From Macrostomum lignano (lineage: Eukaryota): a stretch of DNA of 64,000 nucleotides. Position numbers and translations under genes: made by a program. Below the pieces are notes generated by a model, which did not search any database, was not told the DNA's origin, and worked only from the letters and a program-made list of their open reading frames with translations. The stretch lies in the NCBI GenBank assembly GCA_002269645.1, contig NIVC01000157.1:557159-621158 (forward strand). The letters are read 5' to 3'. This document shows, piece after piece, positions 1,849 through 42,627 of the stretch (positions are counted from its first letter, which is position 1; every line of letters starts with the position of its first letter).

Positions 1849-2139
1849 CTCTATTTCTACCTCTGTCTCTGTCTCTATACAATTTTAATAATTATAATAA
1901 AAACCATATTTTAACTAATATTTAATTATAATTACTACATCAATAATCTTATTTATATTATTACAAATGGAGCTCATCTTCAGGAGGAGAAAGTGGAAGA
2001 ACTACCATCAATGGAATTCCATTCCCTGATATATCCATCAACTGAAATTTCGTGTCTCGAATCCTATCTTCCAAGTCGTCTCCAAATTCTTTACACAACT
2101 CTTCAAAGACCTTTCCGAAGACCTTTACCAAACTTTTCT

Positions 2140-2173
2140 CATCACTCTCTCCTCACACACACACACACACACA

Positions 2174-2271
<98 letters not shown>

Positions 2272-2279
2272 CTCTCTTT

Positions 2280-2333
<54 letters not shown>

Positions 2334-2345
2334 TCTCATTTCACT
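2140..2345. repeat. (CA)n/(CT)n compound microsatellite
   Basis: Direct reading; it generates the spurious SL/ER-repeat ORFs at 1993-2625. Confidence 0.95.
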
Positions 2346-2583
2346 TCTCTCTCCTCTATATCTTCTGTGCATGTCTATTCCCTCTCTCTCCTCTCTCATC
2401 TCTCATCCCTCATCCACCATTTCTTTCTACTCTACTCTCCCACCTATTCCATTTTCTCTGTACGATCTTATCCCTCATCTATTCTCTCACCTACCACCTC
2501 TCTTGTCTCTCTCTTTTATCTCATATCTCCCACAAAACTCCCACAAAACAAACACTAACAAAATAACAAAGTTACTCCAAACG

Positions 2584-2775
2584 CAGGGCGTAGCCAGGAT
2601 TTTGATTTTGATTTTGAGGGATTGAATGGAGGGGCCGCGATTTAAATGGCGCCAGCTTCTTATGTGGGGGATGCCAGTTTCTTTTAAGGGAGGGGGTGGG
2701 GCACCAGTTTCTTTTAGGGGGGGGGGTACCAATTTCTTTTTATTTCCTTACACCCCCCACTCTGGCTACGCCCTG
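2584..2775. mobile_element. hAT-like MITE
   Basis: Terminal inverted repeats CAGGGCGTAGCCAG...CTGGCTACGCCCTG; no matching 8-bp TSD seen. Second copy at 28612-28821. Confidence 0.6.
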
Positions 2776-2806
2776 CTACAGGTCGTATTTCAGATTAGGT
2801 ATTACA

Positions 2807-3366
2807 TTACAGCCGGTCAGGGTACTGCAGGAAAAGAATACGATTTTTAGTTCAGTTATTGTATATGTGTGCACTATATGACCAGCTTATTACAATGTAT
2901 ACAATATATACATGTTCAACTATCATATTTAAACTCCATTGCAGAAACCAATGTATATAATATTATACTCACCGGGTCTAGACCTACGGCCATTCGGCTG
3001 GCCGATTCCAGCCGGGCGCCCCACCGGTCGGCGGCTCGGCGCGCATCAACAACGTCACGCTCGATGGCGCGACGTTGGCCTGGCGTTGACGGGCCGTAGG
3101 CGCCAGCTTCCAGGGCCGCCGCCTCGGCCTCCACAGCCTTGACGGCCGCGGCCGCCAATTGCCACATACGAAAACAATGTCTGTGTAATAGGGTTTCGGT
3201 TCGATACGGATATCGTATTAGTTGATGTTGTTGCTATTTGGCACACCATGTGATAAATGAATAAATAATAATAGATACATTCATATGATGTCACTTACGA
3301 TACGTATGTGGCGACCGGCTGGCCGCGACCGTCAACCTCCAAGACGTCGTTTTGGTTGGCGGACAT
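2807..3366 (-). CDS. 3-exon small orphan protein (97 aa), MW-x21-YG-x23-WxxR family, copy 1
   Basis: Exons 3299-3366, 2973-3180, 2807-2824. Donors GTAAGT and GTGAGT, acceptors acacAG and ttttcctgcAG, phases compatible. Translation MSANQNDVLEVDGRGQPVATYVS-HCFRMWQLAAAA...GLDP-YPDRL*. Confidence 0.75.
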
Positions 3367-3939
3367 GTCTGTAGAAAAAATGCAAGCATTATCACATTAT
3401 GTTATGCACAGTTCGATAAATGATAAATAGCAATAAATATATTGACAACAATAATAAAAGAAATCAACTTACTGTTTGCCTTGAAAGAAATCAATGAGTC
3501 TTGTGTCGACTGAAACTGAAACTGAAATCGAATGGATTTGTTGGGTGATTTTATAAGTCGACTCAACTTAACTGTGTGTACAGTTTACACAAGGCAATCG
3601 TCTATGGCAAAATGTCAATATTTTGTGTTGATCGATCGATGTTTAGTCTATGGTTCTTTGTCGAAAATATTGTTATCGTTCTCTTGTAATACATATTGAT
3701 AGATGGATATAGTTTCAATGTGTACTTTTAGACTGACCATAGCAGCAACAGAATACAGCGTACTGTACACTAAAACAAGCTATATGAATTGCCATAGACT
3801 AAATAGTCTGACACGCACTGTCTATCTAATCTGTGCCAGCGAATGCTTACTGTCAAGAACAAAACGGAACAAAAGCTTGCTTCATATGACTGCAGTCTGA
3901 CTGATGAGATGCGTACCGACCGGAACCTGATGAAGGTGG

Positions 3940-4020
3940 CAAAGTTAGGTGTCTTATAATTGAGTGCTGCATGGGTTCGAATCCCATGTGGTCAGAGTTT
4001 TTTTTCTGTTTAAAGTTTTT
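3940..4020 (+). other. tRNA-like Pol III B-box hairpin followed by an oligo-T run (SINE-like remnant)
   Basis: ATGGG-TTCGAAT-CCCAT T-arm-like stem-loop followed by T runs; repeated at ~29990-30040. No full cloverleaf found. Confidence 0.35.
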
Positions 4021-5576
4021 TTAGAGCAAACAGATTTTCAGTATTTTTTTATTTCTCTTACTCTTATGTTTTTTTATACAATTAAATTAATTACAATTTA
4101 TTATTCTCTTTACACGTTTTTTAAAGAGTACGGGCGAATCTTTTAGTGCGGCACGTATGATTGTTAGTGTAAAAAGTATACTACGATACATGTCGGCAAG
4201 CAAGTATTTGGTGTATATATAAGCGTTTGTCGTCTTTAATTTATTTGATATGTTGTGCCCTTCTTATTGTTCTATCTATATTAATAAAGCTTTTTGGTCA
4301 GAAAAATATGTTTCTATGTTAATTTGTGCTCGATAATACCTAATTTCCTAAGAAATGAGGTTTCTCGTCCTTCTACTTAAGTCGTCATTAAGTTCACCAT
4401 GGCAACAGGTAACAAGTCTGTAAAAATACATTTTCCTGTAAAAAAAACAGTATAGATATCAGGGATAAGAAATAATTAATTTCTATGTTTACTATTCTAT
4501 CTTGACGCTAAAATTCCAACAGAAAAAATTTGTTAATACGGGTGTTACATGTTCCTCAATTCTTTTCGAATTTTTACGATTACATTTGGCTTAAAAGCTA
4601 GAGTTGTTCAATAGATTTTAAATAACAGGTCCGTCCATGGATAATAATTATAATAAGCCGTCGTTAATTGTTTACACTTGTTTTATTTGTGCGCATAATT
4701 GATTGTTAGATAAAGCAAGTGACAATACATTTCACTATTAATCGTAGTTGTCGAATCTAAAGTCAGCAATTAATTAAGACTAAATACAAGTAATTATATT
4801 TCAATTGCATTGTACCTTATGGTTTGTTAGACATTTTGTTCCTAAAAAGCAAAGACCCTAGGATATACCATGCTCGCCAATTTTAGCATCAATTTTACGC
4901 ATCTATTGGCTTCTATTATGGGGGTTGGTTTTCGCTGCTCTGTATTGGCCGATGACAAGGTCATTTGTATACTGTCTAGGGTCATCCCCCGTTTATATTT
5001 AACTCGTTGGTATCGAAATAGAAAGCGTGGGGGTAGCCCGCGAACTGATAAAATGCGCGCCCGCGAGCATCAATCGAAGCCAATTCTGCATTCATTCATT
5101 CAATCTATGGTTAAGCAAAGTTAGTTAGAACTAGCTATATTCTCTTGCTTGTGAGTTTTGATCATTTGCGCATTCGCCCAGTCTGTCCGATTCGTTTGAT
5201 TGTTTCTGGAATCTTGGATTATGATAAACTGTGATTGAACTTGTGAATGAACTGGAATGAATATAGTGCGCCAAGTGATTTATACTTGGTTGATCCATTG
5301 ACGCGTATTGGATTCATTCATCTGTTTATTGAAATATTTAAAATTGGCGCTTTCACATTTTCTTCTTCATTCTATGTCTATTTCAACTTTCAAATCCAAC
5401 GCCTAATTAAATTACTCAGTCTTTTTTTTCCAGTCACAATGAATTCCCTGTACTTTTAAAACACACAACAAACCTCAACTCCGCGGTCGTTTACCCCCTC
5501 TTCCATCGCTCGCCACTCTGCCCCCAAAAGCCCCAACCTCCCCACCCCCCATCCTCTCGCTCGCTTGGCCCCACCA

Positions 5577-6090
5577 CCCAACACTGTACGTTCATTGATC
5601 GATCGAAACCACTAAACTTCCACGCACGCGATCTTTTAGCCTGTCTAATTAGCTAGCAAACCAATTTGATATCAAACGATGAACGCACAACGGTCCGTTG
5701 TACGCACAAGACAACGATGTGCGGTCGGTTATTCGCTGTCTGTCTGTCTGTCCGTCCGTCCGTGTACAAACACGTTGCTCTCTCTTCCAATTCCATACTA
5801 TATAGACGGGCTAGGCTACCACAACGTTGTATTGGCCAACCTTCTCTCTATCTATCTCTCTGACACTCAATGAATTAAATGTGTCAGACAGACACAAAAG
5901 AAGTGAGTGTATTATTAATTAACATTTAGTTAAATTTGAATTCCAGCCACAGCCAACAGATCGAATATTTATTATAAGCGTTACAACTAATCCAACATCT
6001 AATAATCATGGATAATTGGCAACAACTTGACCAATTGAACAAGTGAGTATATGCCTGTTTATAATAACAATTGTAAAGAATCCATACTAC
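5577..6090 (+). repeat. ~0.5-kb inverted repeat, left arm (right arm at 32115-32630)
   Basis: The reverse complement of 32115-32630 aligns colinearly (cccaacactgtac...gatatcaaa...aagtgagta...gaatcca). Confidence 0.9.
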
Positions 6091-7050
6091 TGGTGATAAC
6101 TGGTGACTAGTGATGTGACCCGACTGACTGGTGATGTGACTGCGTTGAGTGGTGATGTGACCAGACTGACTGGTGATGTGACCCGACTGACTAGTGATGT
6201 GACCCGACTGACTGGTGATGTGACCAAGTTGAATGGTGATGTGACCAATTTGACTGGTGATGTGACCATGGTGACTGACGATGTGACCAGACTGACTGGT
6301 GATGTGACCACGTTGACTGGTGATGTGACCCGACTGACTGGTGATGTGACCCGACTGACTGGTGATGTGACCAAGTTGAATGGTGATGTGACCCGACTGA
6401 CTGGTGATGTGACCGCGTTGACTGGTGATGTGACCCAGTTGACTGGTGATGTGACCCAGTTGACTGGTGATGTGACCAAGTTGACTGGTGATGTGACCCG
6501 ACTGACTGGTGATGTGACCCGACTGACTGGTGATGTGACCCGACTGACTGGTGATGTGACCAAGTTGAATGGTGATGTGACCCGACTGACTGGTGATGTG
6601 ACCGCGTTGACTGGTGATGTGACCGCGTTGACTGGTGATGTGACCAAGTTGAATGGTGATGTGACCAAGTTGACTGGCGATGTGACAGAGTTGACTGGCG
6701 ATGTGACCGAGTTGACTGATGATGTGACCCGACTGACTAGTGATGTGACCCGACTGACTGGTGATGTGACCGAGTTGACTGATGATGTGACCCGACTGAC
6801 TGGTGATGTGACCCGACTGACTGGTGATGTGACCGATTTGACTGGTGATGTGACCCGACTGACTGGTGATGTGACCCGACTGACTGGTGATGTGACCGAG
6901 TTCACTGGTGATGTGACCGAGTTGACTGATGATGTGACTGAGTTGACTGATGATGTGACCCGACTGACTGGTGATGTGACCCGACTGACTGGTGATGTGA
7001 CCAAGTTGAATGGTGATGCGACCAAATTGAATGGTGATGTGACCGGCCAT
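6091..7050 (+). repeat. 21-bp minisatellite (ggtgatgtgacccgactgact)n, ~45 units; stop-free, encodes GDVTxLT heptads on +
   Basis: Direct reading; ORFs 6103-7056(+), 5926-7119(-) and 6087-7025(-). Confidence 0.95.
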
Positions 7051-8126: not shown

Positions 8127-11100
8127 TCAATCGCGTATGGGATCACCTGTTAGATCTCGTACAGGCTCGCACGTCCCGTCACAGTCGTACGTCCCATACA
8201 GCGGATGCCCAACGTGCAGCACCGAGACGAGTCGACCTTGCAATGTGTGCCCATGCCGAAGACGTCTTTGTACATCGGGGCTGTACGCATTCACAGGGTC
8301 GTGACCAGCCAGGACGAGTAGTCTGTCTCGCCAATGGTGACTCACTATCGATTGATACTTCTGGTTGACATTGAATGTGTCCCCATTGATCAACCGTAGG
8401 AGCGGAACCTGACGAAAAAATAAACATTACCATAAATCAATATCAACAATATTGATAAATTACATAAATTTGCATAATTTATTATCAACAATCAATAATT
8501 ATGTACTAATTTACTCACCATAGCGTCAGAATTTGAATCGAACAGCTCTGGTCGAACCTCGTCTATGAACATGACGCGATGTACAGCGATGTCCAACGGA
8601 TCGAATAAAAACGTGTTGGCTGTAGTTCGTGACGGGACTATATTGACAACACGATTTTCACCGCAGTGCGCAGCTACGCTGTGAGTCTTGCCAACACCAG
8701 GCGGCCCCCATAGGTACACCACACCTTTGCGTTGGCGGAGAGCTTCGCACACGGCTCGCATCGTTGGACATCCGCGTCGTCGTTCAAATAGCGGTCTGTC
8801 GACAATTTCTACATCAGCGTCGGCGCAGGCGGCGGCAATGGCGGCATTGTTGTCGGCGGTGCAGGCGTTGGGGGGGGTTTCACAAACTCGAAATTTCACA
8901 ACGTCGAAAGCACCTTCTTTCACAAGGTCGAAATTTCACAAGGTCGAAATTTCATAACATCGAAAACTCAAATAGCAGCCACTTTCACAAGGTCGAAACT
9001 TCACAAGGTCGAAATTTCACAACATCGAAAACTTTAGCAAAGGACTTCGTAAGGTCGAAAATTCACAAGGTCGAAATTTCACAACATCGAAAACTCGAAA
9101 AGCAGCCACTTTCATAAGGTAGAAATTTCACAAGGTCGAAATTTCATAACATCGAAAACTTTAGCAAGAGATTTCATAAGGTCGAAATTTCACAAGGTCG
9201 AAATTTCATAACATCGAAAACTCAAGTGCAGCCACTTTCACAAGGTCGAAACTTCATAAGCTCGAAATTTCACAACGTAGAAAACTACTTTATGGTTCTT
9301 GATAGATAAAATTTTCGACTTTGTGAAATTTCGAGCTTATGAAGTTTCGACCTTGTGAAAGTGGCTGCACTTGAGTTTTCGATGTTATGAAATTTCGACC
9401 TTGTGAAATTTCGACCTTATGAAATCTCTTGCTAGATTTTTCGATGTTGTGAAATTTCGACCTTGTGAAGTTTCGACCTTGTGAAAGTGGCTGCTATTTG
9501 AGTTTTCGATGTTGTGAAATTTCGACCTTATGAAATTTCGACCTTATGAAGTCTCTTGCTAAAGTTTTCGATGTTGTGAAATTTCGACCTTGTGAAGTTT
9601 CGACCTTGTGAAATAATTTACTTTTCGACGTTGTCAAATTTCGACCTTGTGAAAGCACCCCCAGGCGTTGTCGGTAGCGACGGCGGCGGTGGCGTCGGCA
9701 GCAACATTAGTCTGATTAATGGCATCAGCCTCGCGTTCATTGGTCCGATTGTCAACACCAGTCGTCGTCGAATGGTTGTCATCAGAGACGTCGTTGATGG
9801 TACGATCGCGAGTATGCCGATTTATAAAATGAGCACAGCACGCGCAACCAATGAGACGCTCTAGATTAATTTGAGGAATCTTCTGTACGCTTTGAAAAAG
9901 ACGAATCATCTCGTGCTTACACGAAACGTGGCGCATCAGAAAATCGTCATCTGGATCTGGTGTGACTACTAATTCGCTATGAGTTTCGATCCAATGATAC
10001 GCTGACACGAGCATGCTACAGTCTGACATATTTACATTACGTAGCATGGCGCAACCATCGTGTCTTGTAACGGAGCCTAACGCAACCTTGACATTTCGGA
10101 CGCCGGCGATAAGGATTCTGCAATCGTTGTCGCTTACTAAATACTGGATATTCGGGTCTGTAGACAGTATCTGGTGAATGATGGTATATAACTGGTAGCC
10201 AGACATGCTGCGTGGTGTTTGCATGTACAACGTAACTCCGCACCAGTTATAATCCAGAACGTCTTCAACCACACGCCTAGATTGTCGGTGACGATTAAGC
10301 GTCCTATGGATTAGTTCATCGTCATCCAGCATGTTGGGCGAATTTCCGGTTAGATTGGCGACAACAAGCGCATTACTTCGACCGCGCAATGCCATGTATA
10401 ATCGCACTTTAAGCTGGTCAGCATCAAGCACACCGGACAGTTCCACGACGTGGTGTATCCGCGTTGAGTTGAGTGCGTAACGGTCGTCGCTCGAAAATGC
10501 GTTAAGCGGCTCGACGTCCCGATTTCGATAGAAACGTATTGGCCCGGAGGCTAGTGCGTATCCGGGTTGTACACTCCTTGGGACAGTCGGACGCGCGTTT
10601 CTATTGGCATACGCGGTGGTGTTTGCGGCAAGACCGGCTGCATCAGTCAAACCGATGTCATCGACAGACAATGGTGTCAGCGATTGACTACTGATTGACG
10701 ATGAGTCATTCGCCGCCGCCGCCGCCGCCGCCGCCGCCGACGCCGCCGCCGCTGCACCCGTTGTTGGTGGCGACTGTACACACGATGCCCTCTTCTTACA
10801 TCTCGCTCTTATCGCCGCCAATACATTGTCTCTCATTGTCGCCGTATTCGAGGCAGACGCATGGCGTGACAATGCGTGTGACCGGATAAGATCGATCGTA
10901 CGCGAGCTAACAGAACTGTCAGAGGCACCGTTACTGGGCAATCTAGTCCGATTCGGTATACGGGCTGATGCTATGGTCGTCCGATGATTGGGCGCGCCTA
11001 TTGTACTGGACGCATCAGATCGCTGCGTATCGTCTGGCGATTGTCCAGTGTGTCGTTGATAGGGCGACGGCTTTGCGCTCGACAACTGTGATGACGAAGA

Positions 11101-12057
11101 TGCATCTGATACAAGTTCGCAGTCGGAGCGCATTAGCTGTTGACTTCGCCTTTTACAACTGGGTTTGCTAGTCGGCGAAGCAAACGAGGCGCCATATTGA
11201 ACACTTGGCCCTGTGATAATTATTTGTAAAAAAAGGCGCTAATTTATACAATTTAATCCTTTCATGCAACAAATCAAGCAAACAAGCAAGCAATCAATCA
11301 ATCAATCAGTCAGTTCAAACACTCATGTATAACAGACCTGTGTCTATCAATCATTTGAACTAGTTAAGCTTAGATATATTGATAAAATATAATCGTTTCT
11401 ACTCACTTTTGTTGCCATTATTGGCTGTCGATTCTACATCGCGCATGAACTCATCGTCATTGGCGAATAACAGCTGACTATTGACTGATGAGATAGACGC
11501 GTTGATGTAGTCATTCACCGCGGCTGACGATTGTTTTGGAGTCGATGCTCGTCAATTAGGTCGCCAGTCGAGAATGATGCAGCCGGAGAAAAGGTGGCAA
11601 CAATTCCAGTCGCATAGTCGTCCTCGTCGGCGGTGCTGTCACGCCACACAACCGGTGTATGAGCGGACACATCGGGCGTAGGAGTATGCGACTTTGGCAC
11701 TGTAGACGGTTCAGCATCGGCAGCAGCAGCATCAGCAGCAGCAGCAGCATCGGCAGCTGCAGCAACAGCAGCAGCAGCATCAGCAGCTGCAGCAGCAGCA
11801 TCGGCAGCAACAACAGCAGCAGCAGGCGCAGCAGCAGCAGCACTGGCAGCAACGGCATCTACATCAAAACCGGCAGCCGTATTGCACAAATCGATAGCAG
11901 CATCTTGTTGTACATTGCTGTTGGTCGATGTATCTGATACAAACGACAGTACCGTTGACCACAGGTTGTTTACGATGGTGACTAGTCGATTCGGTATAGT
12001 TCGCGTAGCACCATCTCCGCAACCGGTAACGTTGTTGTCAGTAGGCTGCCGTTGCAT
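8127..12057 (-). pseudogene. Spliced CRESS/parvo-like Rep with SF3 helicase (~940 aa when reconstructed), interrupted by a foldback TE and one frameshift
   Basis: Exons 12057-11407, 11210-8519 (minus insert 8871-9661 and one TSD copy) and 8408-8127. Introns 11211-11406 (phase 1) and 8409-8518 (phase 0) are GTGAGT...AG. Walker A YLWGPPGVGKT, Walker B VMFIDE, B' LLRLINGDTFNVNQK, Arg-finger-like DVQRRL. One-base frameshift near 11545. Confidence 0.8.
8871..9661. mobile_element. Mutator/foldback-like non-autonomous element
   Basis: 9-bp TSD CAGGCGTTG (8862-8870 and 9662-9670); G-rich termini GGGGG..TTTCACAA / TTGTGAAAGCACCCCC; both arms are inverted arrays of ~16-bp aaggtcgaaatttcac units. Confidence 0.85.
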
Positions 12058-12624: not shown

Positions 12625-13127
12625 TAGTTTGCGGTTTCCCCGGACAGATTATCATAGAAAGAAATCAACTTGATATTCCCAAGACGGATTAGCGGAGATG
12701 GGACAGTTTGCGGTTTCCCCAGGCAGATTTTCCAAGATAGAAATGTCAGGCTTCCCATTTCGTTTGGGATGTTTGGGATGAAGACAACAAACATTCACCA
12801 GAACACAGACAATCTCCCAGATCTAGACAGCAAGCATTCCCCAGACAGCAGGCAATCCCCAGACAACAGGCATTCCACAGACAGATTAGGCCAACCCAAG
12901 ATAAGTTACCTCCTGAGACAGCTACGGACGGGCCCCTCTAACCCCCCCCCCCAAGATAAGTTATCCACATGCATCATCATGCATATTATTAGACCACGAA
13001 ATGGCCGCGAGACAGTTTGCGCTTTCCCCAGAAATATTTTCCAAGAAAACTAAATGCACTTTCCCTGGACAGAATGGCAGTGCGATGAGACAATTCTGAG
13101 ACAGACAGACAGACAGACAGACAGAAT

Positions 13128-13172
<45 letters not shown>

Positions 13173-14125
13173 CTGTTCCCCGGACAGATTTTCCAAGAAA
13201 TCTAAATGCGCTATACAGATTGGCCGGGAGACAGTTTGCGCAAACAGCAACATACCTTTCATTAAACGAAATTAGAAATAAAAAAATTTTTTCATCGCGA
13301 AAATTTTCTAAGTCAAAATAATTTTGACACTTAGAGAAATTTCACATTTCTCAAGGGTCCCCCCAGAAAAAAATTTGGTTGTGGTTGTTGTTAGAGTTAG
13401 GGTTAGGGTTAGGGTTAGGGTTAGTGAGGTAGAACGAATGTATTGTATTGTTGTAGTTCATTCTATTATTAGCATTTGTTACTATAATTAGTACTAGATG
13501 GCATCTATTTATGTAAATAATGTGTATAATTAGTAACAATATCAACTATAAATAGATGCGTTTTCACCCCTAAAGATACTAGACCATCATAGTCTATGGC
13601 TATTTGTTGTATTATATTCAATCAAGTAGTTGAGCTACGAAATAGAAATGAGCTGCTGCTGCTGATGAATAGTTTATATCTCTAGGGGTGAAAACGCATC
13701 TATTTATAGTATCTATTTATACTAATTTTACACATTATTTACATAAATAGATGCCATCTAGTACTAATTATAGTAACAAATGCTAAAAAAATCGATTCGG
13801 TTTTTAGCGCAGCATATAGCTAGTCCAACAACCCCAACCCAACCACTTATCTGTTACAGCCTAGTTTAATTCTGGGGTACGCGCTGCGCTTGCTCGAGAA
13901 ATGTGAAATTTCTCTAAGTGTCAAAATTATTTTAACTTAGAAAATTTTCGCGCTGAAAATTTTTTTTCTCTATGGGGATGCCTGCTATATGAGGGATGCT
14001 TTCTATCTGGGGGATGCCTGCTGTATGAGGGATGCCTGCTGTCTGGGAGATGAATCTTTTTCATACTAATCTGTCTGGGGAACCGCGGTGTGATATCTTG
14101 GAAACTCTGCGTGGATAAACTGCAA
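12625..14125. repeat. ~1.5-kb nested imperfect palindrome (foldback-like)
   Basis: Inverted pairs 13275-13355/13893-13968 and 13469-13575/13680-13786, plus outer ccagacag-rich arms; (TTAGGG)4-5 at ~13397-13424. Confidence 0.75.
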
Positions 14126-16563: not shown

Positions 16564-19500
16564 GTAAATTCTGAATTGCCGGTCGTCAGTTTATCCGCTG
16601 GTCCGTCTACAAGTGGTTTACTCGACGGTGTAGACGTTGGACCAAGCAGTGATTCCAATTTTCAAACTGCGACCAAGACAGTCAACAGTGAACGCCGCCG
16701 CGCTCAAACGGTGACCCCGGCATCGAACACCGAACGCCAATCGTCAGCTAAGTTCGCAACCAGGCCGACCAATGCCGCGCCTGAGCATGTTAGACCGTGT
16801 GTCGTCGAATCTGTCGACGAGTTGTACAACCCAGTCGAACAGAGACCATCTGGCGACGACCGTGTTCATCCATCGTCTAATAATGATTCGGTCGGCAACG
16901 GCATCGCCGATGCGACAATACTAAAGGCGCGCCAATTCCAAGGTAGTAATAATTCATCATTAAATTCTTCTACATTAGTATATAGTATCGCACAATATTA
17001 TTGTATACTTATCGACGTGTACTAATTACATGGTAAATGGATATTGTTTTATGCTTAAACAACCAACAGGCTATTTGACTGATCTGCAAAAAACAGCTAG
17101 TCAACTTGACAGTCTTGCAGAACAGCTTCGTCCAGACATGGAGACTAGCGACGTAGACATTGTCGATGTGACACGTGTACTCCGTGGTCACGTCGAATTG
17201 GCGTCTAAACAGCTGGTCCGTGCACTCGAGACGAGCATCAGTCAGGTCAAGCGTCCTGCTATCGGTAGACTGGCCAGCGCGGTACAACGGCACCAAGAAG
17301 TAGGAGAAGAGATCGCGGTTGGTAACGTCGTCGCGACATCAGACGACGAGATTGTTGCCAGCTTATTGGACGCGATCGAACAGTGTGCCAAGGACAATGA
17401 AACTGCAGATTCTGAGCAGCAAGGCAGAGTCATTGTCGTACCAGCACCGCCTGATAACGACCAAGCCGCCGATGTGTCGTCTGGTTCCGATGCCGACATT
17501 CAGGACGAAGTGGATGACAATGCGGGTGGTTCCGACAGCAGTGCGAGCGAGACTGATGATCCACTTGCCGTGATCGACTATGGTGAAGCACAGTCTATCG
17601 CCGAGGACATGACTAAGCGACTTGTCGATATTTGGTGGAAAATTAATAACAAGATCGAAGAAAACAAGTCGCATGTCCATCGTCGGAAACAACTGACCAC
17701 TGCGGTTCGAGGAACGCTTGACAAATTAAAACATAAGCTGGGCGTCAGTCTGGAGACTTGGTTAAATGCTCCGCACCAAGTTGCCACAGATTTGACAGAG
17801 ATGAAAACCCGCGGTGTCTGGCAAGCAAGTACCGCCGGAGTAAAAGCATGCCAATTACAGTGCATCCTAGCCGCAGTCAAGACTCTATTGGAAAATGAGT
17901 CTGATTTCGGTGCCATCACTGTAATTAGGGCACTCCGGTTATCGGAACCACCCAACGGCGTATTCACTGACGCAACAGATGACGTCACTACCGCGGCCAG
18001 ACTGTTACATGGAATAGCCAGCGGAGTAAAGAAGTTGCCCAGCAATCTATACCATCGAAAGACAGTGTCTGCGTTTCTAATACCTCGAATCGATGCTGTC
18101 TACGTAAGTACCTGTTTGTTTGTTTGTTTGTTTGTTTGTTTGATTATATTTTTGAAATTATAATCTATATTATGTGTAAATTAGAACTATAAACTATGAT
18201 TGTGCATATGATGGTGGTGATGATGATGATGATGATAAGAACGATAATGATGATAAGAACGATAATGATGATAATGATGATACATAAAGATGAATTTTTG
18301 CTTCTCTTATAATACACACAGGCGCAACTCGGACGAGTCAGCCGACAACAGGACAATCGGTACCATCTGAATGATGATGCGCGACAACAAAAATACACCG
18401 AGTTGTTCCTGTCTGTCGAAGAGTATGACCTCGTAAGAAACAGGCTACTGGAATTGGTTAATATGATCGAGAAACATTCCTGGTCAGATTTACCAACAGA
18501 AGGTGCCTGGTCCGACATTGCGCGGCTGGTCAATCAAACGAATTCTCCGCGAGGAAGATGGCGCGATTTCATAATGCCAATCAGTCGCGAGCTGGCATTC
18601 TTGGGCACTGCAATATTCCATAGCAATCGTGTATTGCCGTGGATCTATCTGTGTCGGCATCACCTCGAAGACGCGTTAAAAAACAAAGGCTCCAGTATGG
18701 ATACCGTCATAACGCGATTACCACCAAGCGAGGTGCCACACAAGCAAGGTTCGCGAGGCCGTGGTGCAACACTGTTGTCACCGAGACGATTGTGTAAATC
18801 GTTCATTCTATGGTGCGAAAAGTTTGTCACGCCTGCGCTCGAAGACCTAGATGTGCAAGTGCCCGATGAAATGCACTATATCTTCCCTACTTCCAACGGG
18901 ACGGCTCGAGTCACTGGTGACTATTCGAGGCTCGTGGTCGACGGTTCGGTTCGAGTGATTGGTCGCAAATACCGGGCCAGCGATGGATGGCGCAATCAAT
19001 TGTCTGCGTATGCGCGTTTTCATCCGGACCAGATCGAACAGGTGACGCATTTGTACGACACTTCGAAGCCTGTTGTCACCCGGTACTACGCCGCCGCAGC
19101 AATTGACGCAGCCCGACTCGAAATTGCTACCGACTTGAGGGACTGTTTCGAAAAGTTCGCCGTCAACCAAACTGGTGACGAGCGGAGCAAATCGAAATGC
19201 GCAAAAGTCCAACAGTCCATCTTGGATGCGTCGACGCTTGCGACAGCAATCGAGCAGCAGATCAGTGAGTCGGCGACGACGACGACAACGAAATCGGGAA
19301 GCAGACGACGACGACGAAGCGTTAGCATCGTATTGCCAGAGCAGCACGATCAATCCGACGTTGATACTGCACCGACTAAGACGTCTGGCAAATGTCGCCA
19401 CTCTCAATCGCTGTCGCCGCGTCCGCCATCGTCCGGCAAATGTCGCCTCTCTAAATCGCCGTCGCCGCGTCCGCCATCGTCCGACAAATGTCGCCTCTCT

Positions 19501-20274
19501 AAATCGCCGTCGCCGCGTCCGCCATCGTCCAGCAAACGTCGCTCATTACCGCCGTCGCCGCGCTCGCCGTCGTCTGGTAAGAGTCGTCTGAAATCAAACT
19601 CTCACCAGTTGGCGTCGACATTGTCATCGTCGTTGAGCAGAATGTCGCGATCCAAGTCGCCGCATTCGCCACCAACAAAAAAACGACGTGGTATTATCAA
19701 TTTGCCGAACGTCGATCTAGACGCCGACGATGATGAAGATGCTGACGAAGACGCCGATGACGACGGGGGAACAACTGGCTGTCAAAGAAGCGATGACGCG
19801 ACTCATACGCCAAATGTACAGACTAGCCATCGCCGCCGCTGTGACAACCGATCTGTACCTAAATCGGGGTCGTTGCTCTCCTCTGTACGTACACGCATTG
19901 GATCGAGCGTACCTGCCGATTTAAGTCGATTGGCTGCTAACGACGATGCTGACGATCGGCGATTAGTCCAGACGCGGTCGGAGCGGCGCACTCGTTTGTC
20001 TGGTACATCGACTGACAGTGCTACGTCTTTAGTGGCTGTTGATCAGTCGATTGCTGCGACATCGAATGTGCGATCATCGAGCAGGCGACGCAGATCACTA
20101 TCAACATCTAGTATGCGTTCGAACACCACCCGACGACGATCGCAGTCCGTTGATGCAATTGACTGCGTTGCGACTGGATCGCGTGGGGGTCGACCGGATC
20201 AACAGCAACCGCAACAACACAGGAGCTGTATTGTCACCCGATCAGGTCGTGTCGTTCGGCGCACAGATGCTTGA
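16564..20274 (+). CDS. Spliced tyrosine recombinase (YR)-like protein, >=1120 aa, with disordered Ser/Arg-rich C-terminus; 5' end not identified
   Basis: Exons 16564?-16942, 17070-18103, 18322-20274. Introns 16943-17069 (phase 1) and 18104-18321 (phase 0, GTAAGT..acacAG). YR pattern: HSNR (R at 18628), PHK (K at 18742), YIFPTSNG, DGWR (R at 18991), HLYDTSKPVVTRYY (Y at 19084/19087). AATAAA at 20278. Confidence 0.75.
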
Positions 20275-22321: not shown

Positions 22322-22861
22322 ATGGATCAAATATTCAACAAATCAAACGACCGACCAAGCATGGCAGAACGGATCCCACCAGGTTTTCCTGTACATTTTT
22401 ACGGCGGCTATGAACCCGACGCAAACGACAATTATGTAAGGGACGACACTGGTGTTGAATATCCGCGTAGTCCTGGTGTCATCTTACTTGCGCCCGTTCA
22501 TCAAGCGCTATTGGTTCGCCTAGAGGTACCACAACTCGGCGACCTGCTGGATGACGACGGGACTACGATGAGTGACAACCCTGGTCTGCAGCCCACGTCG
22601 ATAGCTCTAGCAGCAGACATCCAAAATCTGCTAGACATCTTCGGCGAGCTGCGCGACTGGTTGCGTCAGTCACCATCTGCCGAACGAGCGCGGGTCGTCC
22701 GATTGTTGCTCGGCGTACAGCACGACAAGGCTCCGTCAACACAGGCCGTGTCTGATCTGCTGGGTCGTACCATTGGGCATGTACTGCACTTAAAGGCGCG
22801 CTATCAGCACATCATTGATGGCGGTGTGGCTGCCCATATGCGAGCACTCGGACTATTGTGA
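22322..22861 (+). CDS. Orphan single-exon protein (179 aa)
   Basis: GC-enriched ATG-to-stop ORF between microsatellites; a diverged paralog at ~33250-33545 retains QLGDLLDDDGT..LAA.IQNLL..FGEL..WLRQSP. Confidence 0.65.
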   Translation: MDQIFNKSNDRPSMAERIPPGFPVHFYGGYEPDANDNYVRDDTGVEYPRSPGVILLAPVHQALLVRLEVPQLGDLLDDDGTTMSDNPGLQPTSIALAADIQNLLDIFGELRDWLRQSPSAERARVVRLLLGVQHDKAPSTQAVSDLLGRTIGHVLHLKARYQHIIDGGVAAHMRALGLL

Positions 22862-24621: not shown

Positions 24622-25674
24622 TTAATATGAACCAACGACGTAGCGATTGTCATCATCGGCAAGCCAGTTGTCATGTGAACAGTGTTTGCATACTGGCATC
24701 CTGACCCGCCTGCCATATCGGGTGAACGTGGCCTTAGAGACACCAGCTGAACAAAAAGCTGTTCGTCTAAGACGCTTGATCAATCTCGACATGGTCAGGT
24801 CGGATCGGCTAGCCGGTACGCCTACTGGTCCATCTAAACTGGCGCGCGTTCGACCGACACAGCCGGTTACGGGCGACGACGGCGGTGTGTAGCACATATC
24901 GCAATCTGAGTCCATAGCAGCAATAGTAGAGTGGCTACTTGTGCTCGACAGTGGCGTGGAACATGCCGCCCGATCTTCGTCGATAGCTGCAATCGTGGCA
25001 CAACTGTCGTCGGACTGGTGACCCATTGTCGTCATAGAATGGCTACAATCAACCGCGTCGATGTCTACCATATGTACATTGGCGACAGAATCGAACACGC
25101 ATTGCATTTCGTCGATGGCGCTGTCCGTTTCTGTGACTAGTACAACAGGCGACAAGTCGATGTCGTCTCGTGCTCGAGTGTGCTGCGTCGTTGTGGATGA
25201 CTCAATGTGAACAGATGTCTCAACGTGTTCAACCAATTGAACATCTGGACAATAGGCCGACACATCAACTTGGTTGTGCTCTACCGTACAGTCGATCGGA
25301 TAATTAACCTCCGTGTCAACCCCGGCGTCAAAGTCATACCCGACAATATAAATGTATTGACAATCTGGTCTTATATTGTCTGTCTGTATGGCCGTGTCAA
25401 CCAGGAGTCGACTATTTGGTCCGGTAGCAGCATCTACAGTGTCACACCGAATGTCACACTGTATACCAATATCGACAAGTGTCGGCCTCTGCTGGTCCGC
25501 ATGAGTCGAAGATGGATCAGTCTCCACATTCTCGTCTGACTGCGAGTGCGCCGACTGATCAGATGGGCTGTGTCCGGCAATTGTGTCAATGGCGGTTGCT
25601 TGTTTACGATTGCAACGCCTGCGGTGTCCAAATATGTCAACGACCGACTTGCCGCAGTATTGGCACGATTGCAT
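24622..25674 (-). CDS. Orphan protein (~350 aa) with an N-terminal C2HC zinc knuckle and acidic repeats
   Basis: MQSCQYCGKSVVDIFGHRRRC; C-terminal RRVRMPVCKHC; uninterrupted GC-enriched ORF in AT-rich surroundings. Confidence 0.6.
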   Translation of the reverse strand: MQSCQYCGKSVVDIFGHRRRCNRKQATAIDTIAGHSPSDQSAHSQSDENVETDPSSTHADQQRPTLVDIGIQCDIRCDTVDAATGPNSRLLVDTAIQTDNIRPDCQYIYIVGYDFDAGVDTEVNYPIDCTVEHNQVDVSAYCPDVQLVEHVETSVHIESSTTTQHTRARDDIDLSPVVLVTETDSAIDEMQCVFDSVANVHMVDIDAVDCSHSMTTMGHQSDDSCATIAAIDEDRAACSTPLSSTSSHSTIAAMDSDCDMCYTPPSSPVTGCVGRTRASLDGPVGVPASRSDLTMSRLIKRLRRTAFCSAGVSKATFTRYGRRVRMPVCKHCSHDNWLADDDNRYVVGSY

Positions 25675-26202
25675 GTTATCGTTGTCGTTTGTCGTTTGTC
25701 GTTGCTGTTGTGACAATACTATATTAAAACTATACAATATTAAGAATAACAAAACAATAAATCGGCTAATCTTTATGCGTAATTTTTTTGATTAAAATTA
25801 TTGAGCAATTTGCCGTCTGTCTATATGCGCTTGCCAAATTATAGGATTATGATACACTGTACGCATACATTGTCCATAGAGGATATGTCGTACTAAATTC
25901 ACTTAGTTTACTAATATATTCATAATATTACTTATTTTACTAATATATTTATAATAGTACAATTATTAGCAATATTATGTTATGCTTTTTTTACTATTTA
26001 TATATTTGAACTAGAAAAATCGATCGCATTATACGCGGACTATCAGTCTATGGCATAGATTGTCTACAATTGACATTTCAATAGTATTGCCGCATATACA
26101 ATTTCATCTGTGTGTATTCTATTATTCTATTCATCTGATTAAATTTACGCAGGTTGTCTCTGTTACCTAATCACGTTCAAATCTAATTTTATTTACAACA
26201 CA

Positions 26203-26670
26203 ATGGACAGATGGTTCGAATCGGCATCTGCTGGCGAAGAGTCTGTAAATTCAGCGAGTGTTGGGTCTACACAACAAGCCTATGCAAACCAACGCGAAGG
26301 TGTGCAATCGCCGCATGTTGTACTACAACATCCAACTAGACAAGAACACCGAGAGCATCCCGGTGAGTCTAGTAGCGCTGAATTCCACGATCTGAACACA
26401 GTGGCCGCGACTCGGAATCGATCTGATTCGCAATCTACCGTGCTGCTAGTGTCATCGGACTCAGATTCGGATTTGGTTGGGACCCTGTCTGCGCCAATCG
26501 TAATCTCGTCAGGCGTAGACTCAGACGAAGAGGCTGTCGCGTCTCGCAACGCAAACGATCGGGCCAATGCTCTGCACAGAACAGCGAGAGTTTTGGCGAA
26601 CAGGATCGCAAGACGCCGCCTAAATCGTCAAGGGCACAACACCACCAATGATCGTAGCAGAGCCGATTAA
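26203..26670 (+). CDS. Orphan disordered protein (155 aa) with a basic C-terminal helix
   Basis: acacaATG start context, GC-enriched ORF, AATAAA at ~26708. Confidence 0.5.
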   Translation: MDRWFESASAGEESVNSASVGSTQQAYANQREGVQSPHVVLQHPTRQEHREHPGESSSAEFHDLNTVAATRNRSDSQSTVLLVSSDSDSDLVGTLSAPIVISSGVDSDEEAVASRNANDRANALHRTARVLANRIARRRLNRQGHNTTNDRSRAD

Positions 26671-28129: not shown

Positions 28130-28307
<178 letters not shown>

Positions 28308-28419
28308 CGCTTCTCTCTCCTCTCTCTTCTCTTCTCTACTACATTATTTATATCTTCTCCCTTGTCTTTCGTCTGTATTCTCTCCTGTCTCATTGCTCTC
28401 CTTTTTTCTCGTCTATTCT

Positions 28420-30101
28420 CTCTCCCTCCTCTCTCATCTCTCATCCCTCATCCACTCTTACTTTCTACTCTACTCTCCCATCTATTCTATTTCCTCTGTA
28501 CGATCTTATCCCTTGTCTATTCTCTCACCTATCACCTCTCTTGTCTCTCTCTTTTATCTTTTATCTCCCACAAAACAAAACAATAACAAAATAATCAAGT
28601 TACTCCAAACGCAGGGCGTAGCCAGGATTTTGATTTTGATTTTGATTTTGATTTTGAGTGATGGGATGGAGGGGCCGCGAGTTAGGTGGCGCCAGCTTCT
28701 TATGTGGGGGTGCCAGTTTCTTTTAAGGGAGGGGGTGGGGCACCAGTTTCTTTTAGGGGGAGGGGTGGGGGAGCGCCAGTTTCTTTTTATTTCCTTACAC
28801 CCCCCCTCTGGCTACGCCCTGCTACAGGTCGTATTTCAGTCTATATTACATTACAGCCGGTCAGGGTACTGCAGGAAAAGAAGACGATTTTTTGTTTAGT
28901 TATTGTATATGTGTGCACTATATGACCAGCTTATTACAATGTATACAATATATACGTGTTCAACTATCATATTTAAACTCTATTACAGAATCCAATGTAT
29001 ATAATACTATACTCACTGGATCCAGACCGATGGCCAGTCGGCTGGCCCTGTCCAGCCGGTCACCCCAGCGGCCGGCGGCCCGACGCGCGTCGGCCTTGTC
29101 GCGCTCTATGGCCCGATGTTGGCCGGGTGTCGCCGGGCCGTAGGCGCCAGCCGCTACGGCCGCCGCCTCGGCCTCCACAGCCTTGACGGCCGCGGCCGCC
29201 AGCTGCCACATACGAAAACAATGTCTGTGTAATAGGATTTTGGTTCGGTACGGATATCGTATTAGTTGATGTCGTTGGTGGTGGCACACTATATAATAAA
29301 TAAATAAATAAATAATTAAGACATTCATATAATGCTACTTACGATACGTATGTGACGACCGGCTGACCGCGACCGTCGACTTCCAGTACTGCGTTGTCGG
29401 ACATTTCTGCAGGAAAATGCAAGCATTATCCCATTATGTTGCGCATATTTCGATAAATGATAAATAACAATAAATATATTGACAACAATAATAAAAGAAA
29501 TCGACTTACTGTTTGCCTTGAATCAACCAATTGAAATTGAAATTGAAATTGAAATCGAATGGATTTGTCGGGTGATTTTATAAGTCGACTCAACTTAACT
29601 GTGTGCACAGTTTACACAAGACAATCGTCTATGGCAAAATGTCAATAGTTTGTGTTGATCGATCGATATTTAGTCTATGGTTCTTTGTTGAAAATATTGT
29701 TATCGTTCTCTTGTAATACATATTGATAGATGGATATAGTTTCAGTGTGTACTTTTACACTGAACATAGCAGCAACAGAATACAGCGTACTGTACACTAA
29801 ACAAGCTACATGAATTGCCATAGACTAAATAGTCTGACACACACTATCTAATCTGTGCCAGCGAATGCTTACTGTCAAGAACAAAACGGAACAAAAGCTT
29901 GCTTCAATTGACTGCAGTCTGACTGATGAGATGCGTATCGACCGGAACCTGATGAAGGTGGCAAAGTTAGTTGCCTTATAATTGAGTGCTGCATGGGTTC
30001 GAATCCCATATGGTCTGAGTTTTTTTTTCTGTTTAAAGTTTTTTTTAGAGCAAACAGATTTTCAGTATTTTTTATTTCTCTTACTCTTATGTTTTTTATA
30101 C
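28420..30101 (+). repeat. ~1.7-kb direct repeat, copy 2
   Basis: Colinear with 2380-4080. Confidence 0.9.
28851..29404 (-). CDS. 3-exon small orphan protein (95 aa), MW..YG..W..R family, copy 2
   Basis: Exons 29343-29404, 29017-29224, 28851-28868; all splice sites and the YPDRL* end are conserved with copy 1. Confidence 0.75.
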
Positions 30102-30484
30102 AAAAAACAGTAGAGTGAATGCAAAATATTAAGACCGAATTTTAAACTTTACATTTTTAATGAGTAGTTTTTTAACCAATGAGAAGACTGAAAGGACTGA
30201 ATAAAGATGAGACTGGATAGACCAGCCCTCCCCCCAAAAAATGTGCAATTTTTAACTGATGACTACTGGTACATGTACAGTACAGAAAAAATATTAAAAA
30301 TATCGTCAGTTGAGTACGAGACATGAGATGAGATGAGAATCAGGTTGATGAAAAGAACGACTGGAGACGACTGAAGACATTGACAAGAGAGGAGTGAAAC
30401 TGAGTGAAGAAAATTTGACAAGAGGCCGGTGAGATTGACTGCCGACACAGACTCCGAAGCCGAGATCGACAGCCGAGTGAGAGA

Positions 30485-32114: not shown

Positions 32115-32630
32115 GTAGTGTGGATTCTTTATAATTGTTATTATAAACAGGCATTTACTCACTTGTTCAATTGGTCAAGTTGCCGTCAGTTAGCTATCCA
32201 TGATTATTAGATGTTGGGTTATTTGTAACGCTTATAATAAATGGTCGAACTGTTGGCTGTGGCTGGAATTCGAATTTAACTAAAGGTTAATGAATAATAC
32301 ATTCAATTTCTTTTGTGTCTGCCTGACACATTTAATCTATTGGGGGACAGAGAGATAGAGAGATGGTTGGCAAAATACAACGTTGTGGTAGCCTAGCCCG
32401 TCTATATAGTATGGAATTGGAAGAGAGAGCGCCGCGTTTGTACACGGACGGAAAGACAGACAGACAGACAGCGAATAACCGACCGCACATCGTCGTCTTG
32501 TGCGTACAACGGACCGTTGTGCGTTCATCATTTGATATCAAATTGGTTTGCTAGCTAGTTAGACAGGCTAAAAGAGCGCGTGCGTGGAAGTTTAGGGGTT
32601 TCGATCGATCAATGAAAGTACAGTGTTGGG
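32115..32630 (-). repeat. ~0.5-kb inverted repeat, right arm
   Basis: Reverse complement of 5577-6090. Confidence 0.9.
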
Positions 32631-42600: not shown

Positions 42601-42627
42601 ATTTTACTGCCGTTGGCTGCATAGAGC
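39601..42627 (-). pseudogene. pol: Gypsy pol of element A (PR C-terminus, RT, RH, IN), disrupted
   Basis: AANGSKIQTFG..LIGADFL; [22 protein letters not shown]; LTVDASD..YSAFDRELLA; GHPSV..C..C; HVDLVGPLP. Confidence 0.9.

What the first reader, a model, noticed from the sequence alone, without database searches (positions are those of the whole stretch)
8127..12057. Hidden 3-exon Rep/SF3 helicase gene, reconstructed by removing two introns and a foldback insertion; nuclease domain appears inactivated
Seen: deleting 8871-9661 plus one CAGGCGTTG copy fuses ORF 9634-11133 in frame to ORF 8492-8923 (..ATDNA-CTADNN..). Intron 8409-8518 joins Walker B (FIDE..DAM) to VPLLRLINGDTFNVNQK, and intron 11211-11406 adds an Ala-rich exon 1. 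The total of 2825 nt is one base short of 942 codons, matching a frameshift near 11545. Inference: the segment HHVVELSG...LVVANL...GVTLYMQTPR...VRNVKVALGSVTRHD has the spacing of HUH motifs I-III, but the HUH histidines and YxxK tyrosine are replaced. SF3 motif C Asn is replaced by His (LAGH), while Walker A/B are intact. This suggests a viral Rep repurposed as a DNA-binding ATPase.
Basis: partly seen in the sequence, partly recalled or inferred. Interest (0 to 1): 0.82.

Follow-up and report, generated by a model that had tools for sequence, protein, structure and literature searches.

The report
Broken orphan P-loop ATPase gene
This is a real three-exon eukaryotic gene, recently knocked out by a jumping-gene insertion and one frameshift, that encodes an otherwise unknown protein ending in a generic ATP-binding motor domain; nothing I could test shows that it comes from a viral Rep protein.

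Summary
On the minus strand of 8127-12057 there is a gene with three coding exons. It has two short AT-rich GT..AG introns, one nested Foldback-type inverted-repeat insertion with a 9-nt target duplication, and one frame change in the first exon. There are no internal stops.

The Walker A and Walker B motifs are real. That arrangement occurs once in the window and in 0 of 200 simulated windows.

The interpretation (dead HUH nuclease plus SF3 helicase, hence a repurposed viral Rep) is not supported. No Viral_Rep, Gemini_AL1, Parvo_NS1 or RNA_helicase profile matches any piece. The only matches are sub-threshold AAA+ hits (FtsH/p97, Hda/DnaA, DnaC/IstB, MuB-like, RFC, RuvB), almost all confined to the Walker A region.

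An exhaustive search of 1.84 billion proteins with the 318-residue middle region found one relative, at 28% identity, on a 2-kb metagenome contig. That copy also has a frame change, and it too lacks an HUH triplet. Single-sequence structure models were unusable (pLDDT 34 and 41).

Composition resembles the neighbouring orphan ORFs, not the retroelements. The best reading is a lineage-restricted, recently pseudogenised ATPase gene of unresolved origin. An SF3-like helicase remains possible because the core is compact and has no lid domain, but it is unproven.

The parts
8127..12057 (-). Broken three-exon gene, given as one part from the first ATG to the stop. It carries 1 nested Foldback-type transposon insertion and 1 frameshift, and no internal stops.
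   Evidence: ORFs. Introns and exon/intron GC contrast. Open junction segments. Inverted-repeat insertion with a 9-nt duplication.
11211..11406 (-). Intron 1: 196 nt, GTGAGT...CACAG, phase 1, 30% GC.
8409..8518 (-). Intron 2: 110 nt, GTGAGT...GTCAG, phase 0, 20% GC. It splits the ATPase domain between Walker B and the following strand.
11712..11842 (-). Trinucleotide (GCN/CAG-type) repeat that encodes the Ala-rich tract of exon 1. All frames are open here.
9901..10503 (-). Conserved middle domain of unknown fold, about 200 residues. This is the only part with a detectable relative (P0001, contig L001). Shared motifs are R..HVV, LVVA and SG[YW]QLY.
   Evidence: No Pfam, PDB, PHROGs or NCBIfam family.
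8199..8812 (-). C-terminal compact P-loop (ASCE) ATPase core, spanning intron 2. It contains a helix, strand, Walker A GPPGVGKT, Walker B FIDE, and a hydrophobic strand ending in Gly-His (a sensor-1 or motif-C-like position). An Arg-rich helix and a last strand follow. Only about 25 residues come after the core, so there is no room for an AAA+ lid domain.
   Evidence: Secondary-structure order from the low-confidence model.

Best explanation
This is a lineage-restricted eukaryotic gene that was functional until recently and is now a pseudogene in this assembly.

The intact product would be about 940 residues, in three regions:
- a disordered N-terminus rich in Ala, Ser and Thr;
- a conserved alpha/beta domain of about 200 residues and unknown fold;
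- after a low-complexity linker, a compact C-terminal P-loop ATPase of the AAA+/SF3-like (ASCE) class, with no lid domain.

Inferred mechanism when intact: an oligomerising ATPase whose N-terminal domain binds the substrate, most likely nucleic acid, while the C-terminal core hydrolyses ATP to load, remodel or translocate it.

Present state (shown): a non-autonomous Foldback/Mutator-type transposon sits in the linker between the conserved domain and the ATPase and brings in a premature stop. One frame change also separates the Ala-rich first ORF from the rest. Any translation product therefore lacks the ATPase.

Whether the gene's ultimate origin is cellular, transposon or viral is unresolved. 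A Rep/HUH ancestry is not demonstrated.
For: - Real gene: a 499-codon ORF against a maximum of 218 in shuffles, a coding-like GC profile by codon position, and exons at 49-55% GC against 20-30% GC in two GT..AG introns. Junction segments are open.
- Recent disruption: the insertion arms are 95% complementary with a perfect 9-nt duplication, and the rest of the roughly 2.8-kb coding sequence has no stops.
- ATPase: the Walker A + Walker B arrangement is unique in the window and absent from 200 simulations. Best matches are AAA_16 (E = 7e-4), AAA (1e-3, 19.9 bits against a 21.2-bit cutoff), RuvB_N spanning Walker A to B, FtsH and p97 in the PDB (E = 4e-3), Hda (1e-4), a MuB-like family (3e-4) and DnaC-like/IstB/RFC.
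- Family exists elsewhere: one relative among 1.84e9 representatives (E = 9e-6; pairwise E = 6e-14, 28% identity over 104 residues). It is collinear over two blocks on contig L001.
- Resident composition: codon-usage correlation is 0.38-0.69 with the neighbouring orphan ORFs and 0.21-0.30 with the gypsy ORFs.
- The insertion matches Foldback/MULE hallmarks: composite arms of tandem subrepeats and a 9-bp target duplication (PMC3169594).
Against: - Every ATPase profile match is below its curated cutoff, and nearly all cover only the Walker A region. The class of ATPase is therefore inferred from motifs and architecture.
- The core is compact, has no lid and sits at the very C-terminus.
- Both known copies (the window and L001) carry breaks, and L001's copy lies beside an ORF with a transposase-type HTH domain. 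That would fit a selfish element as well as a cellular gene.
- No expression data are available.
- The frame change could be an assembly error.
Confidence: 0.55

Rival explanations
1. This is an endogenised viral or plasmid-type Rep: an HUH-fold domain that has lost its catalytic residues, fused to an SF3 helicase whose motif C Asn has become His. It later acquired introns and was kept as a DNA-binding ATPase.
For: - The domain order matches: an N-terminal domain followed by a compact C-terminal P-loop core, with the protein ending about 55 residues after the motif-C-like strand and with no lid.
- The Walker A to Walker B spacing is short, at 42 residues.
- A Lys-containing segment lies between Walker B and the hydrophobic strand, where SF3 proteins carry motif B'.
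- Rep-derived genes are known to be endogenised and expressed in many eukaryotes (PMC3198968).
Against: - No Viral_Rep, Gemini_AL1, Parvo_NS1 or RNA_helicase match at E <= 10 for any piece, although known endogenous Reps are recognised by exactly those profiles.
- No Rep, NS1, E1 or large-T chain appears among the PDB matches.
- There is no HUH triplet and no YxxK at the assigned positions in either family member.
- About 130-150 residues separate the conserved domain from Walker A, much more than an oligomerisation domain would need.
- No relatives were found in 2.9 million viral contigs.
- The gene is broken, so it is not currently 'repurposed'.
Confidence: 0.17
2. This is a gene of an uncharacterised eukaryotic DNA transposon or other selfish element. 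The ATPase would act as a transposition helper of the MuB/IstB kind, and copies decay after insertion.
For: - The best PHROGs match is a MuB-like 'DNA transposition protein' (E = 3e-4), and IstB and DnaC-like models also appear.
- Both known copies are broken.
- L001's copy is adjacent to an ORF with HTH_23 and HTH_Tnp_Tc3_2 matches.
- The window region is rich in repeats.
Against: - There is only one copy in 64 kb.
- No terminal inverted or direct repeats bound the gene closely.
- The matches cover only the Walker A region and are sub-threshold.
- Spliceosomal introns and codon usage like the neighbours' fit a resident gene.
- The HTH-bearing ORF on L001 may simply be an unrelated Tc1/mariner insertion.
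Confidence: 0.15
3. There is no gene here. The ORFs are chance open frames in GC-richer, repeat-laden DNA, and the P-loop motif is coincidental.
For: - The Ala-rich ORF overlaps a trinucleotide repeat where all frames are open.
- Almost no homologues exist.
Against: - The 499-codon ORF compares with a maximum of 218 in shuffles.
- The Walker A/B arrangement arose in 0 of 200 simulations.
- Two canonical introns have a sharp GC contrast with the exons and restore the frame.
- There is a significant collinear relative.
Confidence: 0.02

Closest known systems
Rep proteins of CRESS-DNA viruses and related plasmids (HUH endonuclease, oligomerisation domain, SF3 helicase), and their endogenous copies in eukaryotes (PMC3198968)
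   Same: An N-terminal domain is followed by a compact, lid-less P-loop core at the extreme C-terminus. The Walker A is of GPPGxGKT type, the Walker A to B spacing is short, and a hydrophobic strand sits where motif C would lie.
   Different: - No match to Viral_Rep, Gemini_AL1 or RNA_helicase profiles.
- No HUH or YxxK motif in either family member.
- Asn is absent at the motif-C-like position.
- The protein is about three times longer, with long low-complexity regions and a linker of about 130-150 residues.
- It has two spliceosomal introns.
- No relatives were found in viral contig collections.
AAA+ initiator, loader and remodeller ATPases (DnaA/Hda, DnaC/IstB, MuB, RFC, RuvB, FtsH/p97)
   Same: These are the best-scoring matches in every library. 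The GPPGVGKTH Walker A and the hhhhDE Walker B match, and the RuvB_N alignment spans both motifs.
   Different: - All matches fall below the curated cutoffs.
- The last exon matches nothing.
- No C-terminal helical lid or sensor-2 domain can fit in the residues that follow the core.
Replitron transposases (eukaryotic HUH Rep transposons with intron-containing genes; PMC10288648)
   Same: Both are eukaryotic, intron-containing genes with disordered termini that escape Pfam.
   Different: Replitron proteins keep the HUH/HUQ and Tyr motifs and have no fused helicase. This protein has a P-loop ATPase and no HUH signature.
Foldback/Mutator-type non-autonomous transposons, for example Tm1 of root-knot nematodes and Drosophila FB (PMC3169594). 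This comparison concerns the nested insertion only.
   Same: Nearly the whole element consists of two long inverted arms made of short tandem subrepeats. It has a 9-bp target-site duplication and no coding capacity.
   Different: The subrepeat sequence is unrelated to any described family that I could check. No second copy lies in the window, and no transposase source was identified.

Membership tests
SF3 helicase (Pfam RNA_helicase, Parvo_NS1, PPV_E1_C, Polyoma_lg_T_C) | Walker A GxxxxGK[ST] after a hydrophobic strand, and Walker B hhhhD[DE] | tested here: met
   The motifs are GPPGVGKT and VMFIDE, 42 residues apart. The arrangement is unique in the window and arose in 0 of 200 simulations. 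This feature is shared with all ASCE ATPases, so it does not discriminate.
SF3 helicase (Pfam RNA_helicase, Parvo_NS1, PPV_E1_C, Polyoma_lg_T_C) | Motif C: a hydrophobic strand ending in an invariant Asn | tested here: not met
   A hydrophobic strand is present but ends in Gly-His, not Ser/Thr-Asn. Whether this position is homologous to motif C is itself unproven.
SF3 helicase (Pfam RNA_helicase, Parvo_NS1, PPV_E1_C, Polyoma_lg_T_C) | Significant profile or sequence match to an SF3 family or a solved SF3 helicase | tested here: not met
   No SF3 family appears at E <= 10 in Pfam, or at E <= 1 in PHROGs and NCBIfam. No SF3 chain is among the 60 PDB matches shown of 80 at E <= 10. The last exon matches nothing relevant.
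SF3 helicase (Pfam RNA_helicase, Parvo_NS1, PPV_E1_C, Polyoma_lg_T_C) | A core without an AAA+ lid domain, with the helicase at the C-terminus of the protein | tested here: met
   Only 57 residues follow the motif-C-like His, which is enough for one helix, one strand and a short tail. No further coding exon is visible downstream.
SF3 helicase (Pfam RNA_helicase, Parvo_NS1, PPV_E1_C, Polyoma_lg_T_C) | Fold-level similarity of the whole ATPase domain to SF3 structures | not testable with these tools
   The domain is split by an intron and I built no joined product. The single-sequence model of the Walker A/B exon had pLDDT 41, too low for a fold search.
HUH endonuclease / Rep (Viral_Rep, Gemini_AL1, Rep_N) | Motif II: His-hydrophobic-His (or HUQ) on a beta strand | tested here: not met
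   The window has I-H-H-V-V and the relative has Y-L-H-V-V. One His is conserved and there is no H-U-H/Q triplet.
HUH endonuclease / Rep (Viral_Rep, Gemini_AL1, Rep_N) | Motif III: catalytic Tyr in a YxxK/H context on a helix | tested here: not met
A conserved Tyr exists elsewhere (SG[YW]QLY), about 85 residues after the conserved His, but without a conserved Lys. That is suggestive of nothing on its own.
HUH endonuclease / Rep (Viral_Rep, Gemini_AL1, Rep_N) | Significant profile match to any HUH family or solved Rep nuclease domain | tested here: not met
   There are no Pfam families at E <= 10 and no relevant PDB hits with the single sequence or the two-sequence profiles. The exhaustive search gave one anonymous relative that has no Pfam domains.
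HUH endonuclease / Rep (Viral_Rep, Gemini_AL1, Rep_N) | HUH fold: a five-stranded antiparallel sheet flanked by helices | tested here: inconclusive
   The AlphaFold2 single-sequence model had mean pLDDT 34 with no residue above 50. I ran no fold search because it would be meaningless.
Classical AAA+ ATPase (Pfam AAA PF00004 and relatives) | Profile score above the curated cutoff | tested here: not met
   AAA scores 19.9 bits against a 21.2-bit cutoff and AAA_16 scores 20.5 against 32.6. Apart from RuvB_N, the matches cover only the Walker A region.
Classical AAA+ ATPase (Pfam AAA PF00004 and relatives) | C-terminal alpha-helical lid domain with sensor 2 | tested here: not met
   The protein stops about 25 residues after the last core strand.
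Foldback/MULE-type non-autonomous transposon (the nested insertion) | Long inverted arms composed of tandem subrepeats, with little or no unique middle | tested here: met
   The arms are 302 nt, 95% complementary and 27 nt apart, with a 16-nt unit and 62- and 127-nt higher-order periods.
Foldback/MULE-type non-autonomous transposon (the nested insertion) | Target-site duplication of 8-10 bp, typically 9 bp | tested here: met
   A perfect 9-nt direct duplication flanks the element. The expected size comes from PMC3169594.
Foldback/MULE-type non-autonomous transposon (the nested insertion) | Multiple dispersed copies in the genome | not testable with these tools
   No second copy lies in the 64-kb window, and the rest of the genome is not available.

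The most novel reading that the evidence does not exclude
The gene may be a decayed member of an undescribed eukaryote-resident family in which a lid-less SF3-type helicase is fused to a non-catalytic, origin-binding-like derivative of the HUH fold. That is the arrangement seen in papillomavirus E1 and polyomavirus large T. On this reading the family descends from an unknown DNA virus or plasmid lineage and has since acquired introns.
Probability: 0.12. Interest if true: 0.65.

Novelty: new member of a known kind. Interest (0 to 1): 0.3.

Why it matters
As it stands, this is a useful annotation and not a discovery. It is a clean example of a spliced gene hidden from ORF-based scans by a recent Foldback-type insertion, and it belongs to a protein family that is almost absent from public databases (one distant relative in 1.84 billion representatives).

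It would matter more if natural intact relatives showed the middle domain to be a degenerate HUH or origin-binding fold joined to an SF3 helicase. That would add an intron-bearing, eukaryote-resident branch to the Rep/SF3 world. At present that is speculation based on motif spacing and the compactness of the ATPase core.

Tried and rejected
- Three word-indexed homology searches (whole 499-aa ORF, P-loop ORF, trimmed middle region) gave no hits. The first was probably swamped by poly-Ala/Ser words, so I repeated it with the trimmed region.
- The exhaustive HMMER search gave a single relative.
- Scans of viral contigs (7), metagenome contigs (2) and prokaryotic genomes (1), using the pieces, the relative and a two-sequence alignment, found nothing. 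The one apparent hit, L002, is an 8-mer coincidence in the antisense frame of a kinase gene.
- Translated searches of the ATPase pieces against 72,556 plasmids gave best E-values of 0.2-1, to assorted P-loop proteins and not to Rep-helicases.
- Exact look-ups of window ORFs found nothing on record.
- AlphaFold2 on the middle region and on the Walker A/B exon gave pLDDT 34 and 41, so I ran no Foldseek search.
- PDB profile searches with the two-sequence alignments gave nothing.
- Replitrons were considered and rejected because they have no helicase and keep the HUH motif.
- A search for LTRs or TIRs bounding the gene found none close by.
- Rfam and tRNA scans of the window were empty.
- I did not build any joined or corrected product of the gene.
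Full report
**Context**

The window is eukaryotic nuclear DNA. It carries micro- and minisatellites, Ty3/gypsy-type pol ORFs at 40-47 kb, short AT-rich introns, and no tRNA or Rfam matches. The finding lies on the minus strand of 8127-12057, in a repeat-rich neighbourhood.

**Checking the observation**

- The four minus-strand ORFs exist. The 499-codon ORF cannot be a chance frame, because the longest open run in 300 shuffles of the same DNA was 218 codons.
- Between two of the ORFs lies an element of about 0.8 kb that is almost entirely two inverted arms (302 nt, 95% complementary, 27 nt apart). The arms are built of a 16-nt subrepeat with 62- and 127-nt higher-order periods, and the element is flanked by a perfect 9-nt direct duplication.
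It also confirms that the summed exon length is 2825 nt, one short of a multiple of three.
- Both proposed introns start with GTGAGT and end with CAG after a pyrimidine-rich tract. They are 20% and 30% GC against 49-55% GC in the exon pieces.
- The segments next to each junction translate without stops in the required frames.
- The Ala-rich first ORF and the 3' end of exon 1 are in different frames, so one frame change separates them. As an alternative gene model, an in-frame ATG in the last 13 codons of exon 1 could serve as the start. In that case the Ala-rich ORF would be upstream sequence or a relic.
- Break count: one insertion, one frameshift, no internal stop codons.

**The ATPase**

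- The exon piece before the small intron carries a hydrophobic strand, then GPPGVGKT, and 42 residues later VMFIDE. A strand + Walker A + Walker B pattern occurs at one site in the six-frame translation of the window and in none of 200 first-order Markov simulations.
- Profile matches are consistent but weak, and all but the RuvB models (RuvB_N in Pfam, ruvB in NCBIfam) stop short of Walker B:
  - Pfam: AAA_16 (E = 7e-4), AAA (1e-3; 19.9 bits against a cutoff of 21.2), AAA_22, IstB_IS21, and RuvB_N covering Walker A through B.
  - PDB: FtsH, p97/Cdc48, Rix7, Hda and a DnaA-related protein.
  - PHROGs: a MuB-like transposition protein, a DnaC-like loader and a clamp loader.
  - NCBIfam: Hda, RFC, ZapE, RuvB and IstB.
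- No SF3 family (RNA_helicase, Parvo_NS1, E1, large T, D5-type) appears in any list.
- The last exon begins with a Leu-rich helix-like stretch and a Lys-containing segment. A hydrophobic strand ending in Gly-His follows, then an Arg-rich stretch and one more strand. It matches nothing in Pfam, PDB, PHROGs, NCBIfam or plasmids.
- The protein stops about 25 residues after the last core strand, so there is no room for the helical lid of classical AAA+ proteins. From general knowledge of these families, a lid-less compact core at the C-terminus is what SF3 helicases look like.

**The middle region and the HUH claim**

- The 318-residue non-repetitive middle region has no Pfam family at E <= 10 and only chance-level PHROGs, NCBIfam and PDB matches, none to an HUH or Rep family.
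- An exhaustive HMMER search of 1.84 billion representative proteins returned a single hit. P0001 is a 125-residue hypothetical protein from JGI metagenome 3300040801 (E = 9e-6 library-wide; pairwise E = 6e-14; 28% identity over 104 residues).
- On its 1,995-bp contig (L001) the similarity is collinear in two blocks that lie in two different frames, so that copy also has one frame change. The contig has no detectable match to the P-loop pieces. After the similarity ends comes an ORF with weak HTH_23 and HTH_Tnp_Tc3_2 matches, a Tc1/mariner-type N-terminus.
- Conserved between the two sequences are R..HVV, LVVA and SG[YW]QLY.
Because the signature is absent from both members, 'inactivated nuclease' is not the economical reading. 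There is simply no evidence that this is an HUH domain.
- Structure prediction could not decide. Single-sequence AlphaFold2 gave mean pLDDT 34 for the middle region and 41 for the Walker A/B exon, so I ran no fold searches.
- Profiles built from the two-sequence alignments found nothing in the PDB.
- Further scans of viral, metagenome and prokaryotic genome collections found no more relatives. One apparent viral hit was an antisense-frame coincidence.

**Origin**

- The exon composition (GC 0.49-0.55, GC3 about 0.5) and codon usage resemble the neighbouring orphan ORFs at 16-27 kb (r = 0.38-0.69) more than the gypsy ORFs (r = 0.21-0.30).
- Together with two spliceosomal introns and long low-complexity tracts, this points to a long-resident gene and not a recent viral integration.
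- There is no second copy in the window and no terminal repeat pair close to the gene.
- Known endogenous Rep genes of eukaryotes are recognised by Viral_Rep or Gemini_AL1 plus RNA_helicase profiles (PMC3198968). This gene is not.
- Replitron transposases, the other intron-bearing eukaryotic Rep genes, keep the HUH motif and have no helicase (PMC10288648).

**The insertion**

Composite inverted arms of tandem subrepeats, a 9-bp duplication and no coding capacity are the hallmarks of Foldback/Mutator-type non-autonomous elements (PMC3169594). The high arm complementarity, the perfect duplication and the otherwise stop-free coding sequence indicate that the gene was disrupted recently.

**Verdict**

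This is a real, spliced, recently broken gene for a protein with a C-terminal P-loop ATPase. The labels 'Rep', 'HUH' and 'SF3' fail every test that could be run here and otherwise remain untested.
- My best explanation (0.55) is a lineage-restricted AAA+/SF3-like ATPase gene of unresolved origin that is now a pseudogene.
- The Rep-derived reading keeps about 0.17 and a transposon-helper reading about 0.15.
- I built no joined or corrected product of the gene.

Noticed in passing
window 2137-4081 and 28143-30103: A direct repeat pair of about 2.0 kb at 87% identity, with strongly strand-skewed composition and no real ORF. It brackets the finding and all the orphan ORFs at 16-27 kb. It could be two copies of a dispersed repeat or the ends of a very large old element.
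   Followed up: partly
window 16576-20274 (+), 22322-22861 (+), 24622-25752 (-), 26203-26670 (+): Several long ORFs (149-623 aa) have coding-like composition but no Pfam, PDB or viral-contig match. The three at 16.6-20.3 kb look like exons of one gene with an SR/SP-rich repetitive C-terminus. Their codon usage resembles that of the finding.
   Followed up: partly
window 40421-46872: Ty3/gypsy-type retroelement ORFs (gag-like with a zinc knuckle, RT, RNase H, integrase) lie on both strands, at 55-60% GC against a background of 40-45% GC. At least two elements or fragments are present.
   Followed up: no
window 6104-7044: A 21-nt minisatellite of about 45 copies at 86% match. It is open in several frames on both strands and produces spurious ORFs of 300-400 aa.
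   Followed up: no
window 5566-6000+ and 32209-32640: An inverted copy of a repeat of at least 437 nt, at 91.5% identity.
   Followed up: no
window 13281-13967: A stretch of about 690 nt that matches its own reverse complement at about 70%, making it a large degenerate palindrome or foldback. Next to it are a (GTTAGG)n tract (equivalent to TTAGGG, about 6 copies) at 13390-13424 and an (AGAC)n tract at 13099-13171.
   Followed up: no
L001 1263-1958: On the metagenome contig that carries the only relative, the next ORF (231 aa) has weak HTH_23 and HTH_Tnp_Tc3_2 matches, like the N-terminus of a Tc1/mariner-type transposase. The contig is therefore probably eukaryotic DNA too.
   Followed up: partly
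window 56807-57631 (-): A weak Adeno_PX match (E = 3e-4, below the cutoff) in an Arg-rich ORF. It is most likely a low-complexity artefact.
   Followed up: no
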